Notes under the pieces: generated by a model
What the model was told of the DNA's origin: nothing
Database searches by the model: none
What the model saw: only the letters and a program-made list of their open reading frames with translations
In this document: positions 23,767 through 61,318 of the stretch, in pieces
Numbering within the stretch: the stretch's first letter is position 1
Layout: each line of letters starts with the position of its first letter
Source of the DNA: Octopus sinensis
Taxonomy: Eukaryota
Length of the DNA: 64,000 nucleotides
Assembly (NCBI RefSeq): GCF_006345805.1
Contig: NC_043001.1
Coordinates: 126,046,001-126,110,000, forward strand
Reading direction: 5' to 3'
Made by a program: the position numbers and the translations under genes

Positions 23767-25036
23767 TTAGGTTGTCAAGTATGAAATTTGTAGAAAAGAA
23801 GAAAAAGTTTGCTAATGTTTTGTAAATACAAGGAATAGTTTTATTCATCAAATTATGCACCCATATTGTCAATACACTTTGGCCATTTCAGTGGTAGCTT
23901 GTCCAGCCCAGAACTGTAAAAGCCTGGCAATCTAGAGTCAATAAAATCTTGGAAGGCCTGTTTTACAGTATCGTTGGAATTAAATTTGTTTCCTTTCAAA
24001 AAGTTATCCAAATTCTGGAAGAAGTGGTAGTCAGTGGGGGCAAAATCAGGTGAGTATAGTGGATGATGGAGAACTTCACACTCCAACTCCTGTAGTTTCA
24101 CCAATGTCATTTTTGCGATGTGTGGTCTGGTGTTATCTTGCAATAAAGTAGGAATGGATATGTTGACTAATCTAAGCTGGTTTTTTATAAGTTCCTGCAT
24201 CATTTGGTCCAGTTGGCTGCAGTATACTTCAGCCGTGATTGATGAGCCAGGTTTAATGAAATCATAATGGATCATACCTGCATCAGACAACCAAACACAC
24301 ACCATCAGCTTCTTTTGATGAATTTTGCTTTTTGGACTCTGTTTTGGTGGCTCATCTTTGTCCAACCATTGTGCTGAACATCTACGGTTGTTGTATTGGG
24401 TCCATTTCTCATCACATTACAACTTGATTCAAAAATGATTCATTTTGTGACGAGAAAGTAACATAATGCAGGCTTCTAAACGTTGCTGTTTCTGATTTTC
24501 ATTGAGTTCATGTGGAACCCACTTATCCAACTTTTTCACTTTACGGATTTGAACTAGGTGAGTCAATATTATTTGCTTGCTAACACCAAACAACAACGAT
24601 AATTCATGGGCACTTTGAGATGAATCTGACTTGATGGTGGCTTTCAGTTCGTCATTATCCACCTTTATTTCTGGTTGACCACATTGCTCATTTATGAGGC
24701 AAAAGTTACCAGAACGAAATTTTGCAAACCAGTTTGATACTGTCTGCTGTAGAATGAAATACTCTATTAATATTCTGAGCTGTCTGTGATACTGTATTTC
24801 TAAGAAAGAACTCATATTTCAAAACTGTACAAATTTCTGACTTATCCATCTCTAAACAAAAATAGCAAAAAATGATTTATAAATACTTTATAAAGTGCAA
24901 AATGAGTTAGAATAAAGAAATAGATGTGTCAGCTTTCTTACAAAAAATAAAGATTGTCAAAATAATGGCACAAAATGAGCAGCTGTCAAAGTTTACCATA
25001 TACCTTACTACAAATATTGTGTTCTTGATAACCTAA
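23767..25036 (-). mobile_element. Full-length decayed mariner (DD34D, Mos1-like) transposon
   Basis: About 1.27 kb, TIRs ttaggttgtcaag.../...cttgataacctaa, TA on both sides. Broken transposase with WVPHEL (ORF 24429-24815) and YSPDFAPTDY (ORF 23853-24365). Confidence 0.93.
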
Positions 25037-26245: not shown

Positions 26246-26321
26246 ATGATTCTACGGCTAAACAAAGTGATGTCGGAGCAGTTCCCTCAAGTTGCTACGA
26301 AAGTGAATTCTCTACAACCAG
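26246..26321 (+). CDS. ALPK1: ALPK1-like, probable coding exon 1 (MILRLNKVMSEQFPQVATKVNSLQP, phase 1)
   Basis: ATG in strong context (gcaccATG) with an in-frame TAG just upstream. Donor ccag|gtaaaa leaves phase 1, matching the next exon (G+AT = Asp). No recognisable homology in this exon, so it rests on splice logic. Confidence 0.55.
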
Positions 26322-27189
26322 GTAAAACTAAAATGGAAAATTTATTGTGTGTGTGTACATGCATGCATACTCTTTACTCTTTACTCTTTTACATGTTTCA
26401 GTCATTTGACTGCGGCCATGCTAGAGCACCGCCTTTAGTCAAGCAAATCGACCCTGGGATTTATTCTTTGTAAGCCCAGTACTTATTCCATCGGTCTCTT
26501 TTGCTGAACCGCTAAGTGACAGGGACGTAAACATACCAGCATCGGTTGTCAAGCAATGCTAGGGGGACAAACACAGACACACAAACACACACACACATAC
26601 ACACATACATATATATACATATATACGACAGCTTCTTTCAGTTTCCGTCTACCAAATCCACTCACAAGCCATTGGTCGGCCTGGGGCTATGGCAGAAGAC
26701 ACTTGCCCAAGATGCCACGCAGTGGGACTGAACCCGGAACCATGTGGTTGGTTAGCAAGCTACTTACCACACAGCCACTCCTGCGCCTATATATGTATGT
26801 TTCATCCTCTATATATGTATGTTTCATCCTCATCATCATCTTTATCACTTCCACCTCCAACATCATCATTGTCATCTTTGCTATAATCACTATTGCAACT
26901 ACCAAATTTGTCATCATCCTTTCCTTCATTACAAGTACCACAGGCAATCATCATTACCACCGACACCCCCAACCATCCATGAACACCATCACAACCACCC
27001 TACTACCTCCACCACCTCTACCACCGCCTTCACCACTGCCACCACCTCCACCACCACTGCCCACTGCCACATCTCCTCCTCTTCCTTATCATCACCATCC
27101 TTGTTGTTTTTTATCCTTGTCATCATCATCATCAATGTCATAATTGTCATGTTGTTAACAGCAGCATCACTGCTGTCTCTGCTGCTGAT

Positions 27190-27697: not shown

Positions 27698-27918
27698 ATG
27701 ATCTACCTGACAAGCTGAAATCTGCAGTCACTGAGGACAGAAACCGTGATCTGAATATAATGCAGGTGTCATTAGATCTTCTCTCAGAGAATCTCAAAAA
27801 ATATTTTGAAAATGCCTTACAACAACTTTGGCCCTTTATGCCACCAACCATTGTACCAGACATGATGTTTGAAAAGAACCCTTTCATCCCCAAACTGTGC
27901 CAAGCAGACCTTTTGTTG
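27698..27918 (+). CDS. ALPK1: ALPK1-like exon 2, start of N-terminal ADP-heptose-binding domain (...DLLSENLKKYFENALQQLWPFMPP...LLL)
   Basis: Acceptor cttcatttcctcttcag, donor ttg|gtgagt (phase 0). LSENLKKYFENALQQLWPFMP resembles human [21 protein letters not shown]. Confidence 0.85.
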
Positions 27919-28215: not shown

Positions 28216-29784
28216 ATTATTATTGTCCAACCCATGCTAGCATGGAAAGCGGACGCTAAATGATGATGATGATGATTATTATTATTATTATTATTATTAT
28301 GTGAGAGAGCAGTGCATGCCATCAAAGTGACACTGTATCCCTGTGGATTTCAAATCTATCCTTAGTGTTGTGAAACACATCTTGAAGCATTTCAGGGGTT
28401 GTCTCCTCCATTGCTAACTGAATGCGTTCTTTAAGTTCAGCTAAACAATAACTCCATCCTTGGATGAAGGTAGAGAAAATAATTGCAGCCAAATTGAAAA
28501 AAAAGCTGTCGTGGACTGATAAACAGGATCCAACTAGAATGAAAATAAAATTATAAAAAAAAATAAATAAAAATTATAAAATTATAAACAAAATAAGAAA
28601 TTTATGCACTTTTGACATGTATTAAACATCATCACCATCATCATCATCGTTTAAAGTCCGCTTTCCATGCTAGCATGGGTTGGACGATTTGACTGAGGAC
28701 TGGCGAACCAGGCTCCAATCTTGATTTGGCAGAGCTTCTACAGCTGGATGCCCTTCCTAACGCCAACCACTCCGAGAGTGTAGTGGGTGCTTTTATGTGC
28801 CACCGGCACAAGTGCCAGTCAGGAGGTACTGGCAACAGCCACGGAAAAATCGTGTTTTGTTTTTTTATGATAAACATAAATAAAAGTGAGATTTTTTAAA
28901 AAATAGTCCAATTTCACTGAAATAAATAGTTAATTCTGGTACACCCTGTATATTAAGTAGAACATTCTGAGGAAACTAATGGAGACCTATCTAAAACATC
29001 AGACTTTACCTCTTCTCAGGATTATGTTAAGGATAAATAAGTTTGTGGAATACTCTCTTTTACTCTTTTACTTGTTTCAGTCATTTGACTGCAGCCATGC
29101 TGGAGCACCGCCTTTAATCGAGCAACTCGACCCCGGGACTTATTCTTTTGTAAGCCCAGTACTTATTCTATCGGTCTCTTTTGCCGAACCGCTAAGTGAC
29201 GTGGACATAAACACACCAGCATCGGTTGTCAAGCAATGCTAGGGGGACAAACACAGACACACAAACACACACACGCATATATATATATATATATATACAT
29301 ATACACGACGGGCTTCTTTCAGTTTCCGTCTACCAAATCCGCTCACAAGGCTTTGGTCGGCCCGAGGCTCTAGTAGAAGACACTTGCCCAAGATGCCACG
29401 CAGTGGGACTGAACCCGTAACCATGTTGTTGGTAAACAAGCTACTTACCACACAGCCACTCCTGCGCCTACATAGTCACAAATTAATTAATTTGTTACTT
29501 AACTAGCTTGATTGGTTGAACATTTAAATTAATGTATACCTGTATTCACATGCTTGCACACACGTGCATATCTCACAAAAGCAAATATCATACTGTAACG
29601 ATATCTTTAAACGAGGGTTGAAGTCATAAATATTTATTTCTTACCTGGGGCTTTCAGCTATTTTACGCTATTGGATTGTGCAGTATTGGGGGACAAGAAT
29701 TGGGCCTTTTTGTTTTGTCTACAATTAAATGTCATTTTCCTATTTATTTTATTTTTTGTTTTTTCATTCAAACCAATTAACCAG

Positions 29785-30034
29785 ACTGCTTTGAATTATG
29801 CAATTGAATGCGGAGAGTTCCACTATGCTTCAGCCCTTGCATTTGTGGTCGATCGATTCATGTACTGGTATGGTGGTTCTAAGGTGTTGTTGAATATTAT
29901 TGATCACATATTGGTACTGAGTCCCTCAACAGTCATTGCTCCACAGTTAACCATCCGGCGTGCACGTATCATGAAGGATAATGGTAATCTCCATGGTGCC
30001 ATAGAAGTCCTTGATAGCCTTATTGATTCGAAAG
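29785..30034 (+). CDS. ALPK1: ALPK1-like exon 3 (TALNYAIECG...FVVDRFMYW...PSTVIAPQLTIRRARIMKDNG...DSKG)
   Basis: ccag|act acceptor (phase 0), aaag|gtaatg donor (phase 1). Close match to human FLVDRFLYG...[21 protein letters not shown]. Confidence 0.93.
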
Positions 30035-31769: not shown

Positions 31770-31871
31770 CTCTCAGTGAAGATGGCCAGTGGCACTACAG
31801 AACTGAGTTTCAGTATATGAATGTTTATGCAGTCTGTGTGCAAATCAAAGGACAGATTTATCGCAACTTAG
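31770..31871 (+). CDS. ALPK1: ALPK1-like exon 4 (ALSEDGQWHYRTEFQYMNVYAVCVQIKGQIYRNL)
   Basis: ttttccaacccag acceptor, ttag|gtaatg donor, phase 1/1. Matches human GTWLYRNE...VCIQIRGQILQKLG. Confidence 0.92.
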
Positions 31872-32960: not shown

Positions 32961-33594
32961 TTTCTCTCAAATTTTTTTCTCTTTTCTTTTTTTCATCTTT
33001 TAAAAGTGTTTACTCTTTTACTCTTTTACTTGTTTCAGTCATTTGACTGCGACCATGCTGGAGCACCGCCTTTAATCGAGCAAATCGACCTCGGGACTTA
33101 TTCTTTGTAAGCCCAGTACTTATTCTATCGGTCTCTTTTGCCGAACCGCTAAGTGACGGGGACATAAACACACCAGCATTGGTTGTCAAGCAATGCTAGG
33201 GGGACAAATACAGACACACAAACATACACACGCATATATATATATACATATATACGACAGGCTTCTTTCAGTTTCCATCTACCAAATCCACTCACAAGGC
33301 ATTGGTCGGCCCGGGGCTATAGCAGAAGACACTTGCCCTAGATGCCACACAGTGGGACTGAACCCGGAACCATGTGGTTGGTTAGCAAGCTACTTACCAC
33401 ACAGCCACTCCTGCGCCTATTTGGCCTGTTTATTTGTAAATAAAGTGATTCCTTTTCTGTTAGTATAAATACATAGATGAAAAATAGACAAATGAAATTA
33501 ACATAAAGATATAAATGACAATACAAAAAATACTAAAAGGGCTTGTTTGGCTATAAACTTCTAACTAGTGGAAGTCTGGTTTAAGCACTCCATA

Positions 33595-34687: not shown

Positions 34688-35308
34688 CCCTTTCGTTACC
34701 GTATTTATTTTGGGATACTCTTTACTCCTTTACTTGTTTCAGTCATTTGACAGCGGCTATGCTGGAGCACCGCCTTTAATTGAGCAACTCGACCCTGGGA
34801 CGTATTCTTTTGTAAGCCCAGTACTTATTCTATTGGTCTCTTTTGCTGAACTGCTAAGTAACGGGGGCATAAACACACCAGTATCGGTTGTCAAGCAATG
34901 CTAGGGGGACAAACACACACAAACATATATATATATATATACATATATACGACGGGCTTCTTTCAGTTTCCGTCTACCAGATCCACTCACAAGGCATTGG
35001 TCGGCCCGAGGCTATAGTAGAAGACACTTGCCCAAGGTGCCATGCAGTGGGACTGAACCCAGAACCATGTGGCTGGTAAACAAGCTACTTACCACACAGC
35101 CACTCCTGCGCCTATGTTCAGTGTTTCTTTCAATGAATTTTAAATATAACGAAGAATTTAGTAAGATAACTTGGTTATCATTCAGCCAGTGTTAGGAACA
35201 TAAATTGTAACTAAGGTTTGGTGGAAGATTTGAATTGAATACTTATGAAAACAAAACATTTGTACTACAGAGCCAGAGACGGTTTCGGTTGGGTTGGTAA
35301 TGAAAGGG
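34688..35308. mobile_element. piggyBac-type MITE family 2 (TTAA|CCCTTTCGTTACC...GGTAATGAAAGGG|TTAA) with SINE-B insertion
   Basis: TTAA on both sides. Relatives at 2668-2890, 25836-26055 and about 34320-34527. Confidence 0.85.
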
Positions 35309-36177: not shown

Positions 36178-36437
36178 GTTTGTGGAAAGAAGCTGTTCCT
36201 CTCTTGTTGAAATCTGTTGAAGAATTTGAGAAACTCCCTGATAAGGACTTGAAAGGCATATCATACTCTTATGGTTTGCTCTCTCATTGTTTGTGTAAGC
36301 TCAGCCATAAGGAGTATTTGGAACTTCAGAACATTTATGTATTTCAGAGAGACCATCCTTGCTATGAGGCATTTGAATATGGCATGAAAGCAGCTGAATT
36401 ATCACCAAAACAGAGTTTGTTTTTTGCAAGACATTGT
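36178..36437 (+). CDS. ALPK1: ALPK1-like exon 5 (GLWKEAVPLLLKS...LPDKDLKGISYSYGLL...QSLFFARHC)
   Basis: attttag|gt acceptor; tgt|gtaaat donor chosen for phase-0 compatibility. Matches human MWYEAAELIWAS...LPQPDKKGLSTSLGIL...TPLF. Confidence 0.9.
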
Positions 36438-37034: not shown

Positions 37035-37252
37035 CTCCAGTCAAGTGAAAGTCTGTTGATGTATGCAGTTCAGGTAACTGATTTGACTCAGCGGAAGAAA
37101 ATATTGGCTGATGTTATTCTGTATCTGCAAAAAGTTATTTTTGCAAACAACATTGCAGAAATTTCAAAGAGTAAGGAGCAATTGTTCATCTTTATAAAAG
37201 GAATTTATGTGATGGTTCTTGTCCTTGGCTGCTCCAATACATCTGCAGATCA
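37035..37252 (+). CDS. ALPK1: ALPK1-like exon 6 (LQSSESLLMYAVQ...SKSKEQLFIFIKGIY...SAD)
   Basis: ttcctatatttcag acceptor (phase 0), ca|gtaagt donor (phase 2). SKEQLFIFIKG resembles human GKQELHSFVKA. Confidence 0.85.
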
Positions 37253-38299: not shown

Positions 38300-39415
38300 G
38301 TTGCCCATGCTTACCAGTACTTTATTTTATCAACCCCAGAGGAATGAAAGACAAAGTTGACTTTAGCAGGAATTGAACTCAGAACATAAAGACTTGGAAA
38401 AAATACCACAAGGCATTTTTTTAATTGTTTAACAACAACAACAACGATAATGATTTCAAATTTTGGCACAAGGCCAGAGATTTTGGGGTAGGGGTTAAGT
38501 CAATTACATTGACCCTGTGTTCAACTGATACCTATTTTATTGACCCCGAAATGATGAAAGGTAAAGTTGACCTTGGTAGAATTTGGATACAGAATGTAAG
38601 AAAGATGAAATGTTGCTAAGCATTTTGCCTGACATGCTAATGATTCTGCCAGCTTGGTGGAATTTGAACTCAGAACATAGTGTGCTAGTGATTCTGCCAG
38701 CTTGCCGCCTTAATAATAATAATAATAATAATAATAACCCTTTCTACTATAGGTACAGGGCCTGAAGCTTGTGGGGATGGGGTTGTTGATTGCATCGACC
38801 CCAGTGCTCAACTGGTACTTGATTCATTGATCCCAAAAGGATGAAACGCAAAGTTGACCTCAGTGGAATTTAAACTCAGAATGTAACAGCAGATGAAATA
38901 CTGCTCAGCATTTTGCCTGGCATGCTAACAATTCTGCCAGCTCTCCACCTCAATAATAATCCTTTCTACTATAGGCACAAGGCCTGGAATTTGAAGGGAA
39001 GGGTGATGGTTGATCATATAGACCCCCAAGTACTTGACTGGCATGTAATTTATCAGCCCCAAAAGGATGAAAGGCAAAGTCAACCTCGGCAGAACTTAGA
39101 ACATAGTGATGGGTGTGATACTGGCTAAGCATTTCATCCAGTATGCTAACAATTCTGCTAGCTTGTTGCCTTAATAATGATAAGGACAATAATAATAATA
39201 ATCTTTTCTACTGGAGGTACAAGGCTTCAGATTTGTGGGGAGGGAACTATCGATTACATCGACCTCAGTGTTCAACTGGTATTTTGACCGTGAAAGGATG
39301 AAAGGCAAAGTCGACCTCAGTGGAATTTGAACTCAGAGCGATGGGTGAAATACTGCTAAGCATTTTGTCCAGTGTGCTAACAATTATGCCAGCTCACCGC
39401 CTTAACAACAACAAC
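38300..39415 (-). mobile_element. Cluster of about five decayed SINE-A variants with an alternative 3' tail, separated by (TAA)n
   Basis: Repeated blocks ccttttctactataggcacaaggcctg...ttgacctc...gaatttgaactcag...tctgccagct...ccgcctt-aataataat. Confidence 0.75.
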
Positions 39416-39440
39416 AACAATAATAATGATAATAATAATA

Positions 39441-39476
<36 letters not shown>

Positions 39477-39489
39477 TAATAATAATAAT

Positions 39490-39950
39490 ACTCTGGGATA
39501 TGTCAATACACACAGATAGGGAAATTAAGGCCAACAGACCAGATATAGTTGTCAGAGACCATGAAGAAAAAAAATGCTTTCTAATTGATGTATCAATACC
39601 AGCGGATGACAACGTGTCTCTAAAAGAAATGGAGAAACTTTCAAAATACAAAGACCTGGAAATACAGGTAACCAGAATGTGGAATCTAAAAGCAGAAACA
39701 ATTCCTATCATAATAGGTGCATTAGGCATGATAAAAAAATATTCAGACAAATACATAACAAAAACACCAGGACTTACAAACACATATAAACATATAGAAA
39801 ATTGCACTACTAGGCACTGCACACATCCTATGCAGAACACTTTCCATACAATAACCATCAAAGCATCACAACAAATCACAGCACATACCCAAGGCACACA
39901 GAGCTCTGCTCGGTAGTGAAGTGAAAGCATGCTATAAAAAATATGCTACT
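39490..39950 (+). mobile_element. R4/Dong-clade 3' fragment, second copy
   Basis: WDMSIHTDREIKANRPDIVVRDHEEKKCFLIDV..., near-identical to the 45457-45910 copy; embedded in (TAA)n. Confidence 0.9.
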
Positions 39951-40375: not shown

Positions 40376-41386
40376 GGACCTTTTCCTTTTGAACAGCAGA
40401 CAATTTCTAGTTAACTAAACACTTTAAAACTTCGTATACTGGTAGAATACTCTTTTACTCTTTTACTTGTTCCAGTCATTTGACTGTGGCCATGCTGAAG
40501 CACCGCCTTTAATCGAGCAACTCGACCCCAGGACTTATTCTTTGTAAGCCCAGTACTTATTCTATCGGTCTCTTTTGCCGAACCGCTAAGTGACGGAGAC
40601 ATAAACACACCAGCATCGGTTGTCAAGCAATGCTAGGGGGACAAACACAGACACACAAACATACACACACACACATATATATATACATATATACGACGGG
40701 CTTCTTTCAGTTTCTGTCTACCAAATCCACTCACAAGGCTTTGGTCAGCCTGAGGCTATAGTAGAAGACACTTGCCCAAGGTGCCACGCAGTGGGACTGA
40801 ACCCGGAACCATGTGGTTGGTAAGCAAGCTACTTACCACACAGCCAAAATAAAACATTTTTTTCTCTTGGTTTTCTTGAGAAAATTGTAATTTGTTTAAC
40901 GTAGTTTAATTTTTCGAATTTTAACCAATCCTATGCTCTCTTTTGAGCTAAAATCATTTGCTGCGTCTAAAACTGAGACAACATCCTGTAACTAACCCTA
41001 ACCCCCCCCCCTAACCCTAACCCTAAATTTTTTTTTTAATTGTTATGTGTGTAAAAATAACTAAAGCAATGGAATTAAATTAATTTAACAATTAAGAAAA
41101 AAAAATTAGGGTTAGGGTTAGGGGGGAGGTTTAGGGTTAGTTACAGGATGTTGTCTCAGTTTTAGACACAGCAAATGATTTTAGTTGAATGGAGGTAATC
41201 GATTGGTTAAAATTGCCGAAATGCTCGGATTTTCAGACGAAATATCTTACTAAGTATAGAATTTTCTCAATAAAACCAAGAGAAAATGATGTTTTATAAA
41301 CACATTCTACCAGTATACAAAGTTTAAAAGTGTTTAGTTAACTAGAAATTGTGTTGACATGTGCCATTCAAAAGGAAAAGATCCTG
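40376..41386. mobile_element. TIR element with central inverted telomere-like (CCCTAA)n/(TTAGGG)n block
   Basis: Termini ggaccttttccttttgaa / ttcaaaaggaaaagatcc, arms complementary over several hundred bp, SINE-B in the left arm. Partial copy at 62300-62520. Confidence 0.75.
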
Positions 41387-42299: not shown

Positions 42300-44171
42300 G
42301 TATTTTGCTGATCATTTGGAGAAGGCTTGCCTCTACTTATACAAGAAATATTCTCTATTAGGAATCGATGGATTGGAAAGTAAAAGAGGTGGAGACATTT
42401 TCAAAGAGATGCTACCGGCAATTAAGTTTCTCTTCGTTACTCTTAAAGAACCAACCATAGAAAGACAAGCATATTTCATTACTAGTTTTAATTCTATGAA
42501 AACTTCTAAACCAGAAGAAATGGAAGACAGTATACGTAATGGTTGTAGTTTGAATAAAGAATATGAGAAGACAATGAAGGAACGAAATGAGAATTACAAA
42601 CAGTCTTCGTATGAAAGCAAGCCTGCTGCCACATTACAAAATAAGGATAGAAATTCAAAAGAGTCTGGGACAGTTTTAAGTGAAGAGAGGGTAAACAAGT
42701 GTATGGTAGACACTAATGTAGTAAGTGAGGTGAGACAGGACAGCTGTAGGATAGACTGCGATACAGTAACTAAAGAAAGGGGTCCTGAATGTATGGCAGA
42801 CCATAACGCAGTAACTAAAGAAAGGGATCCTGAATGTATGGCAGACCCTAATGCAGTAACTAAAGAAAGGGATCCTGAATGTATGGCAGACCCTAACGCA
42901 GTAACTAAAGAAAGGGATCCTGAATGTATGGCAGACCCTAATGCAGTAACTAAAGAAAGGGATCCTGAATGTATGGCAGACCCTAACGCAGTAACTAAAG
43001 AAAGGGATCCTGAATGTATGGCAGACCCTAATGCAGTAACTAAAGAAAGGGATCCTGATGTATGGCAGACCCTAACGCAGTAACTAAAGAAAGGGATCTG
43101 AATGTATGGCAGACCCTAATGCAGTAGTAACTAAAGAAAGGGATCTGAATGTATGGCAGACCCTAATGCAGTAACTAAAGAAAGGGGTCTGAATGTATGG
43201 CAGACCCTCACGCAGTAACTAAAGAAAGGGATCCTGAATGTATGGCAGACCCTAATGCAGTAACTAAAGAAAGGGATCCTGAATGTATGGCAGACCCTAA
43301 TGCAGTAACTAAAGAAAGGGGTCCTGAATGTATGGCAGACCCTAACGCAGTAACTAAAGAAAGGGATCCTGAATGTATGGCAGACCCTAATGCAGTAACT
43401 AAAGAAAGGGGCCCTGAATGTATGGCAGACCCTCATGCAGTAACTAAAGAAAGGGGTCTTGAATGTATGGCAGACCCTAATGCAGTAACTAAAGAAAGGG
43501 ATCCTGAATGTATGGCAGACCCTAATGCAGTAACTAAAGAAAGGGGCCCTGAATGTATGGCAGACCCTAACGCAGTAACTAAAGAAAGGGATCCTGAATG
43601 TTTGGCAGACCCTAATGCAGTAACTAAAGAAAGGGATCCTGAATGTATGGCAGACCGTAATGCAGTAATTCACAAAACAAAAGACAAATGTTCGGGAGAC
43701 AGCAATGTTTCTCATGCAAATGAAAAACAAGAACAAAATTATAAAGAAGAGTCAATAGAATCCAGCATTGAGTCTGGTTATGGCAGTTTAACTAATCCTT
43801 CACAAAATTCATCTGCTTACCTTCAGCCAAATCATTGTTCCTATAAGCAGCATTGCTTAAAACAGCGACCACAGCAAGATACGATACGTGCTTCTGCGTT
43901 GGAGAATTGTAGAAATGTTGGTTTGCATTCAGATCTGTCTATGAAAGATTTATCCAACATGTGTTTAGTTAACGTTAACTATTCGCTAGAGGAAGAAGAT
44001 GATGGAGTAGATGTTGAGGACAACAGTAATGATGGTGGTGATGGGACGGCCGGAGAAGATGTTAATGAAAAATATCAGGGGTCTGTGATTAACAGAAATG
44101 CTGAGAGAACATTACGTCATACTAGACAAGAACAATATAAAGAGAGGAAAACAATGAGACCGAAACTACTG
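42300..44171 (+). CDS. ALPK1: ALPK1-like exon 7, large exon: end of N-terminal domain plus low-complexity linker with 45-bp coding repeat; net -1 frameshift at 43057-43195 as assembled
   Basis: ttttatttattccag|g acceptor completes CA+G (phase 2). ORFs 42316-43083 and 43197-44300 carry the same repeat in different frames. Donor ctg|gtatgt at 44172 (phase 0) precedes a SINE. Confidence 0.8.
42775..43668 (+). repeat. Coding minisatellite, 20 x 45 bp (ERDPECMADPNAVTK)
   Basis: Unit gaaagggatcctgaatgtatggcagaccctaatgcagtaactaaa. Unit starts run from 42775 to 43629 (854 bp = 19x45 - 1). Confidence 0.97.
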
Positions 44172-45456: not shown

Positions 45457-46374
45457 CAGTAGTTTTATTTTTATAGCGTGCTTTCAATTCACTACCGAGC
45501 GCAGCTCTGTGTGCCTTGGGTGTGTGCTGTGATTTGTTGTGATGCTCTGATGGTTATTGTATGGAAAGTGTTCTGTGTAGGATGTGTGCAGTGCCTAGTA
45601 GTGCAATTTTCTGTATGTTATATGTGTTTGTAAGTCCTGGTGTTTTTGTTATGTATTTGTCTGAATATTTTTTTATCATGCCTAATGCACCTACTATGAT
45701 AGGAATTGTTTCTGTTTTCAGATTCCACATTCTAGTTACCTCTATTTCCAGGTCTTTGTATTTTGAGAGTTTCTCCATTTCTTTTAGAGACACGTTGTCA
45801 TCTGCCGGTATTGATACATCAATTAGAAAGCATTTTTTTTCTTCATGGTCTCTGACAACTATATCTGGTCTGTTGGCCTTAATTTCTCTATCTGTGTGTA
45901 TCGGCATATCCTAGAGTATGGTTGCTTTCTCGTTTTCTGTGACCTTTTCTGGTGTGTGCCTATACCATCTTTTTTCTGTTGTTATTCCATAATGTTGGCA
46001 TAGCTTCCAATGTATGTAGGTTCCAACTCTGTCACGTCTGTGAATATATTCCTTCTTAGCCAGGACTGGGCAGCTAGAGATAATATGATTTATTGTTTCT
46101 TGTCCATCTCCACATATTCTGCAGTTACTTGTAATATTTCTTTTCATTACATGTTTTTGGTAATTTCTGGTGGGGAGGCTTTGGTCTTGTGCTGCAATTA
46201 AAAATCCCTCTGTTTCTGCTTTGAGTCCTGAGCTTCTCAACCATTGCTGGGATTTTTCTTTGTCTATTTCTTTTGCATTTAGTTTAGTCCAGTATTTACC
46301 ATGAAGGGGCTTTTCTTGCCATCGTTTTATCATGGTTCGTTGCTGTTCTATTTTTAGTTTGGATTTCATTTGTT
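45457..46374 (-). mobile_element. R4/Dong-clade non-LTR retrotransposon, 5'-truncated 3' end (CCHC knuckle plus restriction-like endonuclease)
   Basis: CRICG...TINHIISSCP zinc knuckle and RPDIVV...LIDVSIP...KLSKY endonuclease motif. One nonsense codon (TAG where the other copy has TGG). Flanked by (TAA)n. Confidence 0.9.
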
Positions 46375-47149
46375 TATTATTATTATTATTATTACTACTA
46401 CTACTACTTTATATATATCCTACATTGTATTGGCATAGCTCAGTGCAACCCCAAAAACCTGTTATTGACAGTTGGTATCATAAAACTGTAGCTGGCATAA
46501 TATAATAGGAACTTTTATATGCATATTCAACAATGTTTCCTGTAAGCAAACTGAAAGAATATATTTTTTTATGTTTGCTACCCTCACACGTTTTTGCCAG
46601 TATATACACATTGAAGCTTTACTATAGTATCATAAATGTATCTACTGCTATTTCCAGTAAACATAGGTGCTTTGTTGTACCACTACTCTATATTTATATT
46701 TCTATCTTTACAGTGCTTTATTTTACTGGAAATTAAAACATTTGTATTGTAATATTTTATTTTCCATTGAAAATTTTTTCACTGTTCTCAGTCTGTTAAT
46801 GGCTAAGCATTCAGACGAGTATACTGGCATTGATATAGGAACATTTGAAATATTGCCCAGGTAAATTCAGCTGATGAAGACTAATCAAATTTACGATGAC
46901 AAACGTATTTGAAGAGTCAGAAACCCAGGTACTGGATTATCCAATTCTGGGTTGTCCATTTATATAATGTTCTTCCTAGAGGTAAGACAAAATTTTTTTA
47001 TGTTTGCTGCCCTCACGCATCTTTGCCAGTATATACACAATACACATCGAAGCTTTACTATAGTGTCGTAAATGTATTGACTGCTATTTCCAGTAAACAT
47101 TGGTGCTTTGTTGTACCACTACTCTATATTTATACATATATTTATACAT

Positions 47150-47570
47150 ATTCTGAACGCCTTACTTCCCTGGGTATGGACACATTGAAACTCCGATGTC
47201 TGGCAGCTGACTTGGCAGACACTCATAATATTAACAACCATCTTACAAACAATAACTCTGAGCACCTTTTCAAACGCCACCCGTCTAACACCCGTGGACA
47301 TATTTACAAAGTCAGAAAACAGCACAGCTCCCATGACTTTAGGAAACATTTTTTCACACTGAGAGTTGCTGAAGCATGGAACAAACTGCCGGCATCAGTT
47401 GTTAGTTGTCGGAGCACTGCATCCTTCAAAACTTCCATGCTTTCTGAGATTCGCCAACACTACACCTGATTTTCTCTCCTCTATACACACACAAGCATGT
47501 ATCTGACTCATACATTGTTCGCTTTCCAGACATTTGTACATTACTGCATATACTTTATTTGCACTTGAAG
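47150..47570 (+). mobile_element. CR1-clade LINE 3' fragment, second copy
   Basis: YSERLTSLGMDTLKLR...NTRGH...RVAEAWNKLP; near-identical to the 60.8-61.3 kb copy. Confidence 0.9.
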
Positions 47571-47880
47571 AATTTTAGTGAAATGAATTAACCTCCAGTA
47601 CTTTTTAAAAAGTACTGGTACATGTTCTATTGGTCTCTTTTGCTGAACTGCTAGGATATGGGGATGTAAATAAACCAACACTAGTTTCAAGTGGTGGTGG
47701 TGGAAATACAAATACACACATATATGATGGGCTTCTTTCAGATTCTGTATACCAAATCCATTCACGAGGCTTTGGTAGAAGACACCTACCTAAGGGTCCA
47801 TGCAGTGGGATTGAACCTGGAACCATGTCGTTTGGAAGCAAACTTCTTACCACACAGCCATGCCTGCACCTGTACTTATC

Positions 47881-50648: not shown

Positions 50649-50844
50649 GTTTACCTGATTCTAGATGAGTCTATACTAACCTTCTTATATAATAATCAAG
50701 ATGACAGTATATTGACACAATTAACTTTGGATAACATTGGGAAGACTGACCTAACTCACGATGTACAAGATGGAGATCCTAATTTCAATTGGTCCGATGA
50801 TCAGTGTGATAATCTGGACAAGCAGATTATCAATCGACTTCAGA
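50649..50844 (+). CDS. ALPK1: ALPK1-like exon 8 (VYLILDESILTFLYNN...DKQIINRLQ)
   Basis: tttacttacag acceptor (phase 0), caga|gtaaat donor (phase 1). Open frame, phases join exons 7 and 9. Confidence 0.8.
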
Positions 50845-51790: not shown

Positions 51791-53631
51791 TGTCCTTGAG
51801 CAAAGTACTTCATTTCACATTGGTTTGGAAATATGCTGTGCTTGAGAAAACCCGGCAAGTTAAGTGAGATTGCATCTATGGTCTATGCCAGTGTCACATA
51901 ACCGGCCCTTTTAAAAGTTCCCTTCAATCGTTGAGCAATGTGCTGTGCTTGAGAAGACCTCTTGAGTCAAGTAAAATCACTATTGTGGCCAATGCCAGTA
52001 CTACCTGACTGCCACCTGTGTTGGTGGCATGTAAAAATCACCATTTGAGTGTATTAGGAAGGACATCAAGCTCTAGAAACCTTGCCAGATCAGATTGGGG
52101 CCTAGTGCAGCCTCTTGGCTTGCCACTCCTCAGTCAAACTGTCCAACCCATGTCAGCATGGAAAGTGGACGTTAAACGACAATGATGATGAGGATGATTA
52201 TTTAATAACAATTAAAGACTTGTAGGAACACAATATTTCGTTATGCAACTATAATATCTATTTCTTTATTACCCACAAGAGGCTAAACACAGAGGGGACA
52301 AACAAGGACAGACATAGGTATTAAGTCGATTACATCGACCCCAGTGCGTAATTGGTACTTAATTTATCGACCCCGAAAGGATGAAAGGCAAAGTCGACCT
52401 CGGCGGAATTTGAACTCAGAATGTAACGGCAGACGACATACCGCTAAGCATTTCACCCGGCGTGCTAACGTTTCTGCCAGCTCGCAACTATTATATACTA
52501 CAGAGTATATTAAACGTTTTTGTATAAGTCAGTACTGTTCTACTGTGTTAGCAGTGCTATTACATCACTTGTTAAGGTCATCTCTACAGATTTTCAATAA
52601 AAATTATAGCCAGCACTAATTTTGTTATAACATTTTATATCTGAAACGCTGCAACAAAGTCAGTGCTAGCTATAATTCCTATAGAAAATTCGTAGAGATG
52701 AACTTAACAAGTATTTGATAACAGTTTGATTTTGCTTGATACAACTTAATGTTTCATAGGCTTGTCATATGTCTGAAAAAAAAACACACTGTAAAAGTTT
52801 GAGCAGTAATGCATTAACATGAAGTTAAATATATGTTGGTCATAGAGTGATGAATGGTCTTGCATTGGCCACTCTACGAACAAACATGTTTTTAACTTCT
52901 TGTAAACATGCGCAGGAGTGGCTGTGTGGTAAGTAGCTTGTCTACCAACCACATGGTTCCGGGTTCAGTCCCACTGCATGGCACCTTGGGCAAGTGTCTT
53001 CTACTATAGCCTCGGGCCGACCAAAGCCTTGTGAGTGGATTTGGTAGACGGAAACTGAAAGAAGCCCGTTGTATATATGTATATATATATATGCGTGTGT
53101 GTGTTTGTGTGTCTGTGTTTGTCCCCTAGCATTGCTTGACAACCGATGCTGGTGTGTTTATGTCCCCGTTACTTAGCGGTTCGGCAAAAGAGACTGATAG
53201 AATAAGTACTGGGCTTACAAAAGAATAAGTCCCGGGGTCGAGTTGCTCGACTAAAGGTGGTGCTCCAGCATGGCCGCAGTCAAATGACTGAAACAAGTAT
53301 ACACACACACATACATATATACAACAGGCTTCTTTCAGTTTCTGTCTACCAAATTCACTCACAAGGCTTTGGTCGGCCCGAGGCTATAGTAGAAGACACT
53401 TGCCCAAGGTGCCACGCAGTGGGACTGAACCCGGAACCATGTGGTTGGTAAACAAGCTACTTACCACACAGCCACTCCTGCGCCTATATATATATATCAA
53501 TAATTTACAAAATAAGGGCAAAAGAAAAATTCTAATGCCAAATATGCCGCAAAAAAGGCAAAAATTGTCAATAACCATTATAATTTATGCGTCTCGAAAC
53601 AAACCGACAGAAATTTCTAAAAAATCCGTTA

Positions 53632-54372: not shown

Positions 54373-54526
54373 ATGCTGTTTTATACCACTACAATCCAGT
54401 GACATCTATGTGGTATATCCAAGACACGATAGTTTATATAAGTAAAGAGCTCTCTGTTGGCAAAAAAGGTGGCTTCCGAGATGTTTATGAAATGAACTTT
54501 CTGCATCAAGATGAACCACTTGGAAG
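54373..54526 (+). CDS. ALPK1: ALPK1-like exon 9, alpha-kinase N-lobe (NAVLYHYNPVTSMWYIQDTIVYISKELSVGKKGGFRDVYEMNFLHQDEPLG)
   Basis: Hand translation (absent from ORF track). ccattctag acceptor, gaag|gtttgt donor (phase 2). Matches human WTAQETIVYLG...[22 protein letters not shown]. Confidence 0.92.
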
Positions 54527-55775: not shown

Positions 55776-56304
55776 ATACATTTGCAAACGTTACCGAAAA
55801 GAGAAAGATCCACTTGATTATATTGATGATGTTAAATGCCAGATGGAAGCAGGCCTTTATGTGACATACTTCAATCAAGCTCTCAAATCTTACCAATCTG
55901 ATATTCGCATTCATTACCTCCCTGCTGCTTACATGCATCTATTGGATGCCAATGGAGATGTAGAGTTCTGGGTAAACATTGAACCATTTGTAGAGGGTGA
56001 ATTTCTGAAATTGACCAATAACTATGATTACTGTAATCCTAGAGGACGTGACATGTCAACAGCTTTTACTCACTTCACATATTTTAAGTCTGCTGGCAAA
56101 TTAATGGTTGTTGATCTACAAGGCTGGTTACCATGGGGTGTACAGAATATAATTTATCTCACAGATCCCCAGTTTCACACTGTTACAGGGGATAGCAGCA
56201 CATTTGATTTTGGAATTGATGGTTTCAAAGTTTTCTTTAATAAGGTTCACCCAAAATGCAATCATATTTGTGAAACACTTAAATTGGAGAGACCTGACTT
56301 TTGA
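55776..56304 (+). CDS. ALPK1: ALPK1-like exon 10, alpha-kinase catalytic domain to stop (YICK...EPFVEGEFLKLTNN...HFTY...VVDLQG...YLTDPQFH...DFGIDG...CNHIC)
   Basis: Alpha-kinase motifs intact: catalytic Lys in YICK, VVDLQG, TDPQ, xFGxxG, His/His/Cys/Cys zinc ligands. ttcattctag|a acceptor completes AG+A; TGA at 56302-56304. Confidence 0.96.
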
Positions 56305-60432: not shown

Positions 60433-60715
60433 TAGATACATATATATTATATATATTATATGTCTAGACAACACACACATACACACACATAATATATATA
60501 TATATATATTATATATATATATTATATATATATATTTATATTATCTATATATTTATTATATATATTATATATTTATATATATATTAATATATTTTATATA
60601 TATATGTGTATGTGTGTGTGTGTCTAGACATATGATATATATAATATTATATGTATCTATGTGTGTGTGTATAATATATATATATATATCTACACACAGA
60701 TACATACATATATAG
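60030..60715. repeat. Compound (TA)n/(TG)n/(CA)n low-complexity tract
   Basis: Direct inspection. Confidence 0.95.
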
Positions 60716-61318
60716 CTATGGTAAGACCTCTCCTGGAATTTGCATCACCGGTCTGGAACCCCTATCTTGCCCAGGATATCAATCGTGTGGAAGCCGTTCA
60801 GCAGCGTGCAACCAAGAGAATACCCTCCATCAGGCATTTGCCATATTCTGAACGCCTTACTTCCCTGGGCATGGACACGTTGAAACTCCGACGTCTGGCA
60901 GCTGACTTGGCAGACACCCATAAAATTATTAACCATCTTACTAACAATAACTCTGGAACCTTTTCAAACTCCACCCGTCTAAACACCCTGGACATATTTA
61001 CCAAGTTCAGAAAACAGCACAGCTCCCATGACTTTAGGAAACATTTTTTCACGCTGAGAGTTGCTGAAGCATGGCACAAACTGCCGGCATCGGTTGTTAG
61101 TTGCCGAAGCACTGCATCCTTCAAAACTTCCATGCTTCCTGAGATTCGCCAACACTACACCTGATTTTTCTCCCCTCCATACACATGCAAGCATGTATCT
61201 GACTCATACATTGTTCACTTTCCAGACATTTGTACATTACTGCATATGCTTTATACGCACTTTCTGACAAGTTGTGGTGCACCTGAGCACTGTATACAAT
61301 AATTTCATTATTATTATT
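60716..61318 (+). mobile_element. CR1-clade LINE 3' fragment (RT C-terminus, 3' UTR, (ATT)n tail)
   Basis: VRPLLEFASPVWNPY...VQQRATKRI...YSERL...FFTLRVAEAWHKLP; ends tttcattattattattat. Confidence 0.9.

What the first reader, a model, noticed from the sequence alone, without database searches (positions are those of the whole stretch)
36240..36275. Tyrosine at the position equivalent to human ALPK1 Thr237, the ROSAH hotspot
LPDKDLKGISYSYG aligns without gaps to human LPQPDKKGLSTSLG, placing TAC (36264-36266, Tyr) at T237. Human T237M causes ROSAH syndrome and is reported to broaden activation to endogenous nucleotide sugars. The Q67 contact also seems lost (WPFMPPTIVP vs WPFVPEKWQY), while the phosphate-binding Arg/Lys residues and the Y254 and V1092 equivalents are kept. 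The octopus pocket may therefore recognise a different sugar moiety.
Basis: partly seen in the sequence, partly recalled or inferred. Interest (0 to 1): 0.75.

Follow-up and report, generated by a model that had tools for sequence, protein, structure and literature searches.

The report
Octopus ALPK1 with tyrosine gatekeeper
The octopus version of the bacterial-sugar sensor ALPK1 carries a tyrosine where humans have Thr237 (the residue mutated in ROSAH syndrome); the change is real, shared by cephalopod-like relatives and kept by selection, but this position also varies in other animals, so a change in the sugar sensed is plausible and unproven.

Summary
TAC at 36264-36266 encodes Tyr246 of an ALPK1 orthologue, identical to Octopus sinensis XP_029636967.1. 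It aligns without gaps to human Thr237, and the invariant Asp231, Lys233 and Gly234 anchor the register.

The phosphate-clamp residues, Tyr254, Phe295, the catalytic Lys and Val1092 are kept. Gln67 aligns to Val, but that change is found across molluscs and lies next to an indel.

In 58 homologues, column 237 is Ser or Thr in 45. Chiton and gastropods have Ser. Tyr or Phe occurs only in Octopus and a few unnamed contigs, two of which are closest to Octopus. Those sequences also have Leu239 changed to Tyr and Ala281 changed to Tyr or Phe.

The gene is under purifying selection (dN/dS 0.28 for the N-terminal domain, 0.05 for the kinase). However, natural Ala (eels, Arapaima, Denticeps, Lineus), Met (a shrew) and Val (coelacanth) also occur at 237. 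The residue alone therefore predicts ligand choice poorly.

A remodelled sugar sub-site is the best reading, but it is an inference. Whether both domains sit in one protein is unresolved. A cluster of small indels in a 45-nt tandem repeat breaks the frame, probably through assembly error.

The parts
26246..26321 (+). First coding exon (MILRLNKVMSEQFPQVATKVNSLQP, phase 1 donor)
   Evidence: tblastn with O. bimaculoides P0152; the spliced CDS is identical to O. sinensis XP_029636967.1
27698..27918 (+). Exon A. Holds the WPF motif (27829-27837) and Val78 (GTA 27853-27855), which aligns to human Gln67
   Evidence: AG/GT borders
29785..30034 (+). Exon B. Holds the Arg116, Arg150 and Arg153 equivalents (CGA 29854-29856, CGG 29956-29958, CGT 29965-29967)
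31770..31871 (+). Exon C (human residues about 177-208)
36178..36437 (+). Exon D, the ligand-pocket exon. Asp240 (36246-36248) and Lys242 (36252-36254) are the Asp231 and Lys233 equivalents. Tyr263 is the Tyr254 equivalent, Glu280 the Ser277 equivalent and Tyr284 the Ala281 equivalent. Phe298 (36420-36422) is the Phe295 equivalent
   Evidence: this exon has no amino-acid difference from O. bimaculoides
36264..36266 (+). TAC = Tyr246, at the position of human Thr237 (the finding)
36270..36272 (+). TAT = Tyr248, at the position of human Leu239. That column is Leu in 50 of 58 homologues
37035..37252 (+). Exon E (helical repeats after the pocket)
42300..44171 (+). Large exon F: the end of the N-terminal domain plus an acidic, low-complexity linker. 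Donor is CTG|GTATGT, phase 0
42764..43668 (+). Tandem repeat of 45 nt x 20 copies, encoding ECMADPNAVTKERDP units
   Evidence: TRF, 94% matches
43018..43196 (+). Four odd-length repeat units (44, 44, 47, 44 nt) giving a net -1 frameshift. A premature stop follows in frame 0, and the frame reopens from 43179 to the exon's donor
   Evidence: The O. bimaculoides assembly has a run of N in the same array
50649..50844 (+). Inferred linker exon (phase 0 in, phase 1 out) joining exon F to the kinase exons
   Evidence: The reading frame runs from exon F through this exon into K1 and K2 without a stop. The block is 90% conserved with O. bimaculoides, where the annotated kinase gene starts. There is no transcript evidence
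54373..54526 (+). Kinase exon K1
55776..56304 (+). Kinase exon K2, ending in the TGA stop. Catalytic Lys is AAA 55786-55788 and the Val1092 equivalent is GTG 55861-55863
   Evidence: Pfam Alpha_kinase E = 4.3e-39; ALPK1 kinase domain 9j4p_A E = 3e-47

Best explanation
The window holds the Octopus sinensis orthologue of ALPK1. In vertebrates, ALPK1 is a cytosolic receptor kinase: its N-terminal alpha-helical solenoid binds bacterial ADP-heptose and switches on a C-terminal alpha-kinase domain.

The octopus N-terminal domain keeps the Arg/Arg/Arg/Lys clamp and the Asp that hold the diphosphate in the human protein. It therefore most likely still binds a nucleotide-diphosphate sugar (inferred).

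At the start of the pocket helix, the small hydroxyl 'gatekeeper' is Thr in most vertebrates and Ser in other molluscs. In Octopus and its closest relatives it has become an aromatic residue (Tyr or Phe). Leu239 to Tyr and Ala281 to Tyr/Phe, on the neighbouring faces and helix, changed with it.

One relative has Phe, so what is conserved is aromatic bulk rather than the hydroxyl. The hydrogen bond that gives human ALPK1 its specificity is therefore probably not used. The sugar sub-site is most likely repacked, and selectivity among NDP-sugars most likely differs from wild-type human ALPK1 (inferred, not shown).
For: - **Orthology and fold.** The spliced N-terminal domain matches 5z2c_A at E = 2.7e-31. 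The AlphaFold2 model has pLDDT 85.7 and pTM 0.83. Its top 11 Foldseek hits are all ALPK1 N-terminal domains (TM 0.68-0.76, E about 1e-14), and the next fold scores 2e-3. The kinase exons match Pfam Alpha_kinase at 4.3e-39 and the ALPK1 kinase domain at 3e-47.
- **Register.** The alignment is gapless, anchored by invariant Asp231, Lys233 and Gly234.
- **Pocket facing.** Lys242 and Tyr246 lie i/i+4 on helix 241-255 of the model. This matches Lys233 and Thr237 both touching the ligand in the human protein (PMC10723048, PMC11614533).
- **Lineage pattern.** Ser237 occurs in Liolophura, Haliotis (both paralogues), Pomacea, Patella and Littorina. Tyr occurs in O. sinensis, O. vulgaris and O. bimaculoides.
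- **Unnamed relatives.** SYSYS is found in a transcript contig that is 61% identical to octopus. SFSYS is found in a 591-kb contig with the same exon structure, whose nearest named relative is Octopus (49%, against 41% for chiton).
- **Selection.** dN/dS against O. bimaculoides is 0.28 for the N-terminal domain and 0.05 for the kinase. Residues 215-331 show no amino-acid change.
- **Human precedent.** T237M and T237A broaden activation to UDP-mannose and ADP-ribose (PMC10723048, PMC11614533).
Against:
- Column 237 naturally holds Ala (Anguilla, Arapaima, Denticeps, Lineus), Met (Sorex fumeus) and Val (Latimeria). Fish ALPK1s in general are reported to signal normally (PMC11573728). Background substitutions can therefore absorb changes at this site.
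- The two contigs closest to Octopus are unnamed, so 'cephalopod-wide' is an inference from similarity.
- A third Tyr237 fragment (P0120) carries the gastropod-type two-residue deletion, so the change may have arisen more than once.
- It is not shown that the ligand-binding domain and the kinase domain are translated as one protein.
Confidence: 0.5

Rival explanations
1. The substitution is compensated and functionally neutral. The octopus protein is still an ADP-heptose (NDP-heptose) sensor with vertebrate-like selectivity, and Tyr237 with Tyr239 and Tyr281 is just another way to pack the same pocket.
For: All diphosphate-clamp residues, Asp231 and Phe295 are kept. Natural Ala, Met and Val at 237 in vertebrates and a nemertean show the site tolerates change. 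Co-occurring changes at 239 and 281 look like repacking. Fish, amphibian, bird and mammal ALPK1s are reported to signal comparably (PMC11573728).
Against: In human ALPK1, removing the Thr237 hydroxyl (Met or Ala) is enough to lose selectivity (PMC11614533). A Tyr or Phe side chain is much larger than any other residue seen in this column, and a close relative has Phe with no hydroxyl. Gln67 is also not conserved in molluscs.
Confidence: 0.35
2. The locus is decaying or split. The frameshift in the repeat array is real, so octopus makes an N-terminal-domain-only protein (as in the RefSeq models). Tyr237 then sits in a protein that no longer works as a ligand-gated kinase, for example a decoy or a pseudogene.
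For: The window's spliced CDS stops inside the repeat array exactly as XP_029636967.1 does. O. bimaculoides is annotated as two adjacent genes, an 808-aa N-terminal part and a 302-aa Alpha_kinase part. No transcript joining the two was seen.
Against: Both domains are under purifying selection (dN/dS 0.28 and 0.05). All exons have conserved GT-AG sites in two species. The frame after the indel cluster stays open, and the exon phases connect exon F, a conserved linker exon, K1 and K2.

The frame break is a cluster of four 1-3 nt indels in the middle of a 20-copy tandem repeat. The O. bimaculoides assembly has an N gap at the same place, which is typical of assembly error. The O. bimaculoides model ends by reading into an intron past a consensus donor.
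Confidence: 0.1
3. The equivalence with Thr237 is an alignment artefact or a chance match.
For: Overall identity to the human protein is only about 25-35%. The first search with the single exon gave only E = 0.007.
Against: E = 2.7e-31 with the spliced domain. Three methods give the same register. There are no indels between 231 and 240 in 58 homologues. The fold match is specific to ALPK1.
Confidence: 0.02

Closest known systems
Human/vertebrate ALPK1 (alpha-protein kinase 1; PDB 5Z2C, 8ZD3, 9J4P)
   Same: It has the same two-domain plan: an N-terminal alpha-solenoid ligand domain and a C-terminal alpha-kinase domain separated by a long disordered linker. The Arg116, Arg150, Arg153, Lys233 and Asp231 equivalents, Tyr254, Phe295, the catalytic Lys1067 and Val1092 are the same. 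The fold match has TM about 0.7.
   Different: Thr237 is Tyr, Leu239 is Tyr, Ala281 is Tyr, Ser277 is Glu and Gln67 aligns to Val. The linker carries a 15-residue tandem repeat. Continuity of the two domains is not shown, and neither the ligand nor the substrate (TIFA) has been tested.
Human ROSAH variants ALPK1 T237M, T237A (engineered) and S277F
   Same: The same pocket position (237) or its neighbouring helix (277/281) loses the small hydroxyl side chain or gains bulk. In the human protein this lets endogenous UDP-mannose and ADP-ribose activate the kinase.
   Different: The octopus residue is a wild-type, selectively maintained aromatic residue with co-varying neighbours. It is not a dominant disease allele on a human background, and its effect on selectivity is unknown.
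Other molluscan ALPK1-like proteins (Liolophura XP_064598888.1, Haliotis XP_067652821.1 and XP_046577085.1, Patella, Littorina, Pomacea)
   Same: They share the architecture, clamp residues, Glu at position 277 and a non-Gln residue at position 67. They are 35-52% identical in the pocket exon.
   Different: They keep Ser at 237. Leu at 239 is kept in all but Patella, which has Gln. The S-[YF]-S-[YF] motif appears only in Octopus and three unnamed fragments (P0045, P0048, P0120).

Membership tests
ALPK1 (ADP-heptose receptor kinase) | N-terminal alpha-helical solenoid homologous to the human ALPK1 ligand-binding domain | tested here: met
   phmmer against 5z2c_A gives E = 2.7e-31. The AF2 model (pLDDT 85.7) has ALPK1 N-terminal domains as its top 11 Foldseek hits, TM 0.68-0.76.
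ALPK1 (ADP-heptose receptor kinase) | C-terminal alpha-kinase catalytic domain with the catalytic Lys | tested here: met
   Pfam PF02816 E = 4.3e-39. The best PDB match is the ALPK1 kinase domain 9j4p_A at 3e-47, against eEF2K at 1e-21. The Lys1067 and Val1092 equivalents are present.
ALPK1 (ADP-heptose receptor kinase) | Both domains in one polypeptide | tested here: inconclusive
   Exon phases and an open frame connect exon F, the linker exon, K1 and K2. However, a net -1 frameshift sits in the tandem repeat, and public models either stop there or split the gene.
ALPK1 (ADP-heptose receptor kinase) | Diphosphate clamp Arg116/Arg150/Arg153/Lys233 plus Asp231 | tested here: met
   All five are conserved in the window and in nearly all homologues.
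ALPK1 (ADP-heptose receptor kinase) | Small hydroxyl gatekeeper (Thr/Ser) at position 237 that bonds the heptose | tested here: not met
   Tyr246 (TAC 36264-36266). The column is Ser or Thr in 45 of 58 homologues.
ALPK1 (ADP-heptose receptor kinase) | Gln67 sugar contact | tested here: inconclusive
   It aligns to Val78, but an indel lies next to it. Other molluscs have Lys, Thr or Leu there.
ALPK1 (ADP-heptose receptor kinase) | Activation by ADP-heptose and phosphorylation of TIFA | not testable with these tools
   This needs biochemistry. The presence of a TIFA gene in Octopus was not examined.

The most novel reading that the evidence does not exclude
Cephalopod ALPK1 has been retuned, through an aromatic gatekeeper (Tyr/Phe237 with Tyr239 and Tyr/Phe281), to sense a nucleotide sugar other than ADP-heptose, or to ignore NDP-heptose. 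NDP-heptose biosynthetic genes are reported in Mollusca (PMC11573728), so one reason could be avoiding self-activation. That would make this a natural example of an innate immune receptor re-specified at the exact residue whose mutation causes human ROSAH syndrome. It would also show that the ALPK1 pathway pre-dates vertebrates.
Probability: 0.2. Interest if true: 0.8.

Novelty: new variant of a known kind. Interest (0 to 1): 0.5.

Why it matters
Thr237 is the residue that keeps human ALPK1 from responding to the cell's own nucleotide sugars, and its mutation causes ROSAH syndrome. Natural proteins with other residues there are ready-made experiments on how this receptor tells bacterial heptose from self sugars. 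Examples are Tyr or Phe in Octopus and its relatives, Ala in eels, Arapaima and Denticeps, and Met in a shrew. They could also guide the design of mutant-selective drugs.

The data further show clear two-domain ALPK1 homologues in molluscs, an annelid, a nemertean and amphioxus. A recent published account states that ALPK1 is confined to vertebrates (PMC11573728). The origin and ancestral ligand of this pathway are therefore open and testable.

Tried and rejected
- **The search for homologous proteins.** The 86-aa exon found nothing, and the full N-terminal domain found only two proteins. Its word index is too sparse for these eukaryotic proteins. The exhaustive representative search was used instead.
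- **Single-exon PDB search.** It was dominated by designed TPR proteins, and the WPF exon alone gave no ALPK1 hit. Only the spliced domain gave a decisive match.
- **Recalled human sequence.** It served only as a lead to find exons. The numbering was then checked against 5z2c_A up to residue 261. Positions 277, 281 and 295 rest on the recalled sequence agreeing with real vertebrate orthologues in the same MAFFT columns.
- **Literature on the pocket.** I looked for a residue-by-residue description of the heptose contacts in open papers and found only the Thr237, Arg150, Arg153 and Lys233 statements.
- **Prior work on invertebrates.** I found none on mollusc or cephalopod ALPK1.
- **Pseudogene reading.** Considered and judged unlikely on dN/dS and splice-site conservation.
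- **Geometry.** The structure tool returns no coordinates, so side-chain geometry and docking could not be examined.

Full report
**1. Observation**

Window 36234-36275 on the + strand translates to LPDKDLKGISYSYG, and the TAC at 36264-36266 is the first Tyr. The DNA is AT-rich eukaryotic sequence with microsatellites and interspersed repeats. The peptide sits in an exon with AG and GT borders (36178-36437).

**2. Gene model**

I first used a human ALPK1 sequence recalled from memory, only as a lead, to locate exons by tblastn. I then confirmed every junction against database proteins. The coding exons on the + strand are:

| Exon | Coordinates | Note |
|---|---|---|
| 1 | 26246-26321 | Start codon |
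| A | 27698-27918 | WPF motif |
| B | 29785-30034 | Three clamp arginines |
| C | 31770-31871 | |
| D | 36178-36437 | Pocket exon with the Tyr |
| E | 37035-37252 | |
| F | 42300-44171 | Large exon with tandem repeat |
| Linker | 50649-50844 | Inferred |
| K1 | 54373-54526 | Kinase |
| K2 | 55776-56304 | Kinase, ends in TGA |

All introns are GT-AG. The spliced product of exons 1 to F is identical over all 636 residues to Octopus sinensis XP_029636967.1, 'alpha-protein kinase 1-like'. The window is therefore O. sinensis, or indistinguishable from it. In that numbering the finding is Tyr246.

**3. Is it ALPK1, and is the register right?**

- The spliced N-terminal domain matches the human ALPK1 N-terminal domain (5z2c_A) at E = 2.7e-31. 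No other PDB protein matched at the E-value cut-off used, 0.01.
- The printed alignment uses native human numbering (Trp59, Gln67). It has no gap from residue 179 to 260 and puts Tyr opposite Thr237. Asp231, Lys233, Gly234, Ser236, Ser238 and Gly240 are identical.
- An exhaustive HMMER search of 1.84 billion representative proteins returned 151 homologues. In a MAFFT alignment of those covering the site, none of 58 sequences carrying the Asp-x-Lys-Gly anchor has an indel between 231 and 240.
- An AlphaFold2 model of residues 1-453 is confident (pLDDT 85.7, pTM 0.83). Its top 11 Foldseek hits in the PDB are all ALPK1 N-terminal domains (TM 0.68-0.76, E about 1e-14). The next fold, kinesin light chain TPR, scores E = 2e-3.
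- In the model, Lys242 and Tyr246 sit one helical turn apart at the start of helix 241-255. This fits the human data that Lys233 and Thr237 both touch the ligand.
- The downstream exons K1 and K2 encode an alpha-kinase domain (Pfam PF02816, 4.3e-39). Its best solved relative is the ALPK1 kinase domain (9j4p_A, 3e-47), well ahead of eEF2 kinase (1e-21). The catalytic Lys and the Val1092 equivalent are present.

**4.

- The Arg116, Arg150, Arg153, Asp231, Lys233, Tyr254 and Phe295 equivalents are kept.
- Gln67 aligns to Val78, but a short indel follows immediately.
- Chiton (Lys) and gastropods (Thr, Leu) also lack Gln at this column. Amphioxus, an annelid and a nemertean have Gln. This is a mollusc-wide difference, not an octopus one.
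- Ser277, the third ROSAH site, is Glu in the octopus and Glu or Gln in the invertebrate homologues.

**5. How unusual is Tyr at 237?**

Counts among the 58 anchored homologues:

| Residue at 237 | Count |
|---|---|
| Ser | 26 |
| Thr | 19 |
| Ala | 6 |
| Tyr | 3 |
| Phe | 2 |
| Met | 1 |
| Val | 1 |

Names from the cluster tables give the following pattern:

- Ser in the chiton Liolophura, in Haliotis (both paralogues), Pomacea, Patella and Littorina, in Branchiostoma and in the annelid Owenia.
- Thr in most vertebrates.
- Tyr in O. sinensis, O. vulgaris and O. bimaculoides.

Three unnamed fragments also carry an aromatic residue together with an aromatic residue at 239:

- **P0048** is an RNA-derived contig from run SRR30931882. 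It reads KGTSYSYS and is 61% identical to the octopus protein.
- **P0045 / locus L001** is a 591-kb contig from ENA analysis ERZ21867824. It reads KGTSFSYS and has the same exon C, D and E structure with long introns. Its nearest named relatives are the Octopus proteins (49%), ahead of chiton (41%) and gastropods (37%).
- **P0120** reads SSYSFG but carries the two-residue deletion typical of gastropods, so it may be an independent origin.

A fourth unnamed fragment, P0076 (SFSLG), has Phe at 237 but keeps Leu at 239. Its closest relative in the set is P0039, which has Ser237.

Across Octopus, P0048 and L001, the substitutions that stand out against all other taxa are Leu239 to Tyr (Leu in 91% of the others) and Ala281 to Tyr/Phe. 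Position 281 lies on the helix that carries position 277. The likely ancestral Ser codon (TCN) reaches Tyr (TAC) or Phe (TTC) by one base change.

**6. Is the gene alive?**

I fetched the O. bimaculoides locus (L004) and aligned it exon by exon.

- Exons are 94-98% identical, against roughly 85-91% for introns. All splice sites except the inferred linker acceptor are conserved.
- Nei-Gojobori dN/dS is 0.28 for the N-terminal domain (dS 0.113) and 0.05 for the kinase (dS 0.145). Residues 215-331, the pocket region, do not differ at all.
- Both domains are therefore under purifying selection.

One blemish remains. Exon F contains a 45-nt tandem repeat of 20 copies (42764-43668). Four consecutive units at 43018-43196 are 44, 44, 47 and 44 nt long, which gives a net -1 frameshift and a stop. 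The RefSeq protein ends there.

After this cluster the frame stays open to a consensus donor (CTG|GTATGT). The phases then connect through a conserved 196-nt exon to K1 and K2 without a stop. The O. bimaculoides assembly has a run of N in the same array. Its annotation splits the locus into an 808-aa gene and a 302-aa Alpha_kinase gene, and the first of these ends by reading into the intron.

I read the indel cluster as probable assembly error in a hard repeat. This is not proven, so 'one polypeptide' is left inconclusive.

**7. What the literature says about the site**

- T237M is the main ROSAH allele.
- Thr237 lies in the ADP-heptose site, and its hydroxyl bonds a sugar hydroxyl.
- T237M, and even more so T237A, become responsive to UDP-mannose and ADP-ribose (T237A also to GDP-mannose). 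The authors therefore call the bond a gatekeeper (PMC10723048; PMC11614533).
- Thr237 was described as highly conserved in vertebrates (PMC6752478).
- A commentary on the NDP-heptose work states that ALPK1 and TIFA homologues are limited to vertebrates, and that heptose biosynthetic enzymes occur in animals including Mollusca (PMC11573728).
- I found no paper on mollusc or cephalopod ALPK1.

**8. Interpretation**

*Shown.* This is an ALPK1 orthologue under selection. Its gatekeeper position holds Tyr, in a lineage where the neighbouring core positions 239 and 281 also became aromatic. The diphosphate clamp is intact.

*Inferred.* The protein still binds an NDP-sugar. One close relative has Phe, so aromatic bulk rather than a hydroxyl is what is kept. 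The human-type gatekeeping bond is therefore probably not used, and the sugar sub-site is repacked. Selectivity among NDP-sugars most likely differs from human wild type. I put this at about 0.5.

*Main rival (about 0.35).* The pocket is compensated and still reads NDP-heptose. The strongest argument for the rival is that Ala (Anguilla, Arapaima, Denticeps, Lineus), Met (Sorex fumeus) and Val (Latimeria) occur naturally at 237. Residue 237 alone therefore does not set specificity.

*Other rivals.* A decaying or split gene is unlikely (about 0.1), and misalignment is very unlikely.

**9. Novelty and interest**

The gene is already annotated as ALPK1-like, so the family membership is not new. 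The aromatic gatekeeper signature, its co-varying partners and the evidence of constraint are, as far as the searched literature shows, undescribed. It is a new variant of a known kind.

It would interest people working on ALPK1 ligand discrimination and ROSAH, mainly as one of several natural variants that can be tested directly. Without biochemistry the functional claim is a hypothesis, so I score interest at 0.5.

Noticed in passing
Related protein P0021 (Sorex fumeus XP_055972616.1), column 237: The smoky shrew's reference ALPK1 reads GISMSLG. Its wild-type residue is Met237, the same residue that causes dominant ROSAH syndrome in humans.
   Followed up: partly
Related proteins P0027 (Anguilla), P0023 (Arapaima), P0040 (Denticeps), P0010 (Lineus), P0030 (Latimeria): Ala occurs naturally at position 237 in three early-branching teleost lineages and a nemertean, and Val occurs in the coelacanth. 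Engineered human T237A is even more promiscuous than T237M (PMC11614533), so these species must tolerate or compensate for the change.
   Followed up: partly
Homologue set (P0003, P0004, P0006, P0007, P0010, P0011, P0013, P0014, P0044): Proteins with the ALPK1 N-terminal domain exist in a chiton, gastropods (two paralogues in Haliotis), a freshwater mussel, the annelid Owenia, the nemertean Lineus and amphioxus. The alpha-kinase domain was confirmed directly in chiton and Haliotis. A published commentary states that ALPK1 homologues occur only in vertebrates (PMC11573728).
   Followed up: partly
window 42764-43668: A 45-nt tandem repeat of 20 copies inside the large exon encodes ECMADPNAVTKERDP units in the inter-domain linker. 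Four odd-length units at 43018-43196 break the frame. The O. bimaculoides assembly has an N gap in the same array, and its annotated isoforms differ in length (808-861 aa).
   Followed up: yes
L004 10001-29193 and 31315-34044 (O. bimaculoides CM046605.1): The public annotation splits the locus into an 808-aa N-terminal-domain gene and a separate 302-aa Alpha_kinase gene 2 kb downstream. In the window, the same interval is 10 kb and filled with repeats.
   Followed up: yes
window 36270-36272 and 36378-36380: Besides Tyr at 237, Octopus and its two closest unnamed relatives share Tyr at the Leu239 position and Tyr/Phe at the Ala281 position. The second lies one helical turn after the Ser277 ROSAH site.
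   Followed up: partly
window 23856-24818 (- strand): Two adjacent open frames look like a mariner/Tc1-type transposase (…HPLYSPDFAPTDYHFF…), just upstream of the first ALPK1 exon. This is judged by eye; no family search was run.
   Followed up: no
window 39302-39913 (+), 45557-46408 (-), 46900-47466 (+), 60628-61161 (+): These are fragments of retrotransposon-like open reading frames, in the intron before exon F, in the F-to-linker intron and downstream of the gene. The pairs are near-duplicates of each other. This is judged by eye.
   Followed up: no
window 26382-26773, 29056-29454, 33014-33403, 34723-35098, 40451-40842, 47565-47856, 53290-53470: A short interspersed element of about 400 nt recurs at least seven times on the + strand within the ALPK1 locus, mostly in introns, and also in the O. 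bimaculoides locus (L004 1414-1661, 17284-17659).
   Followed up: no
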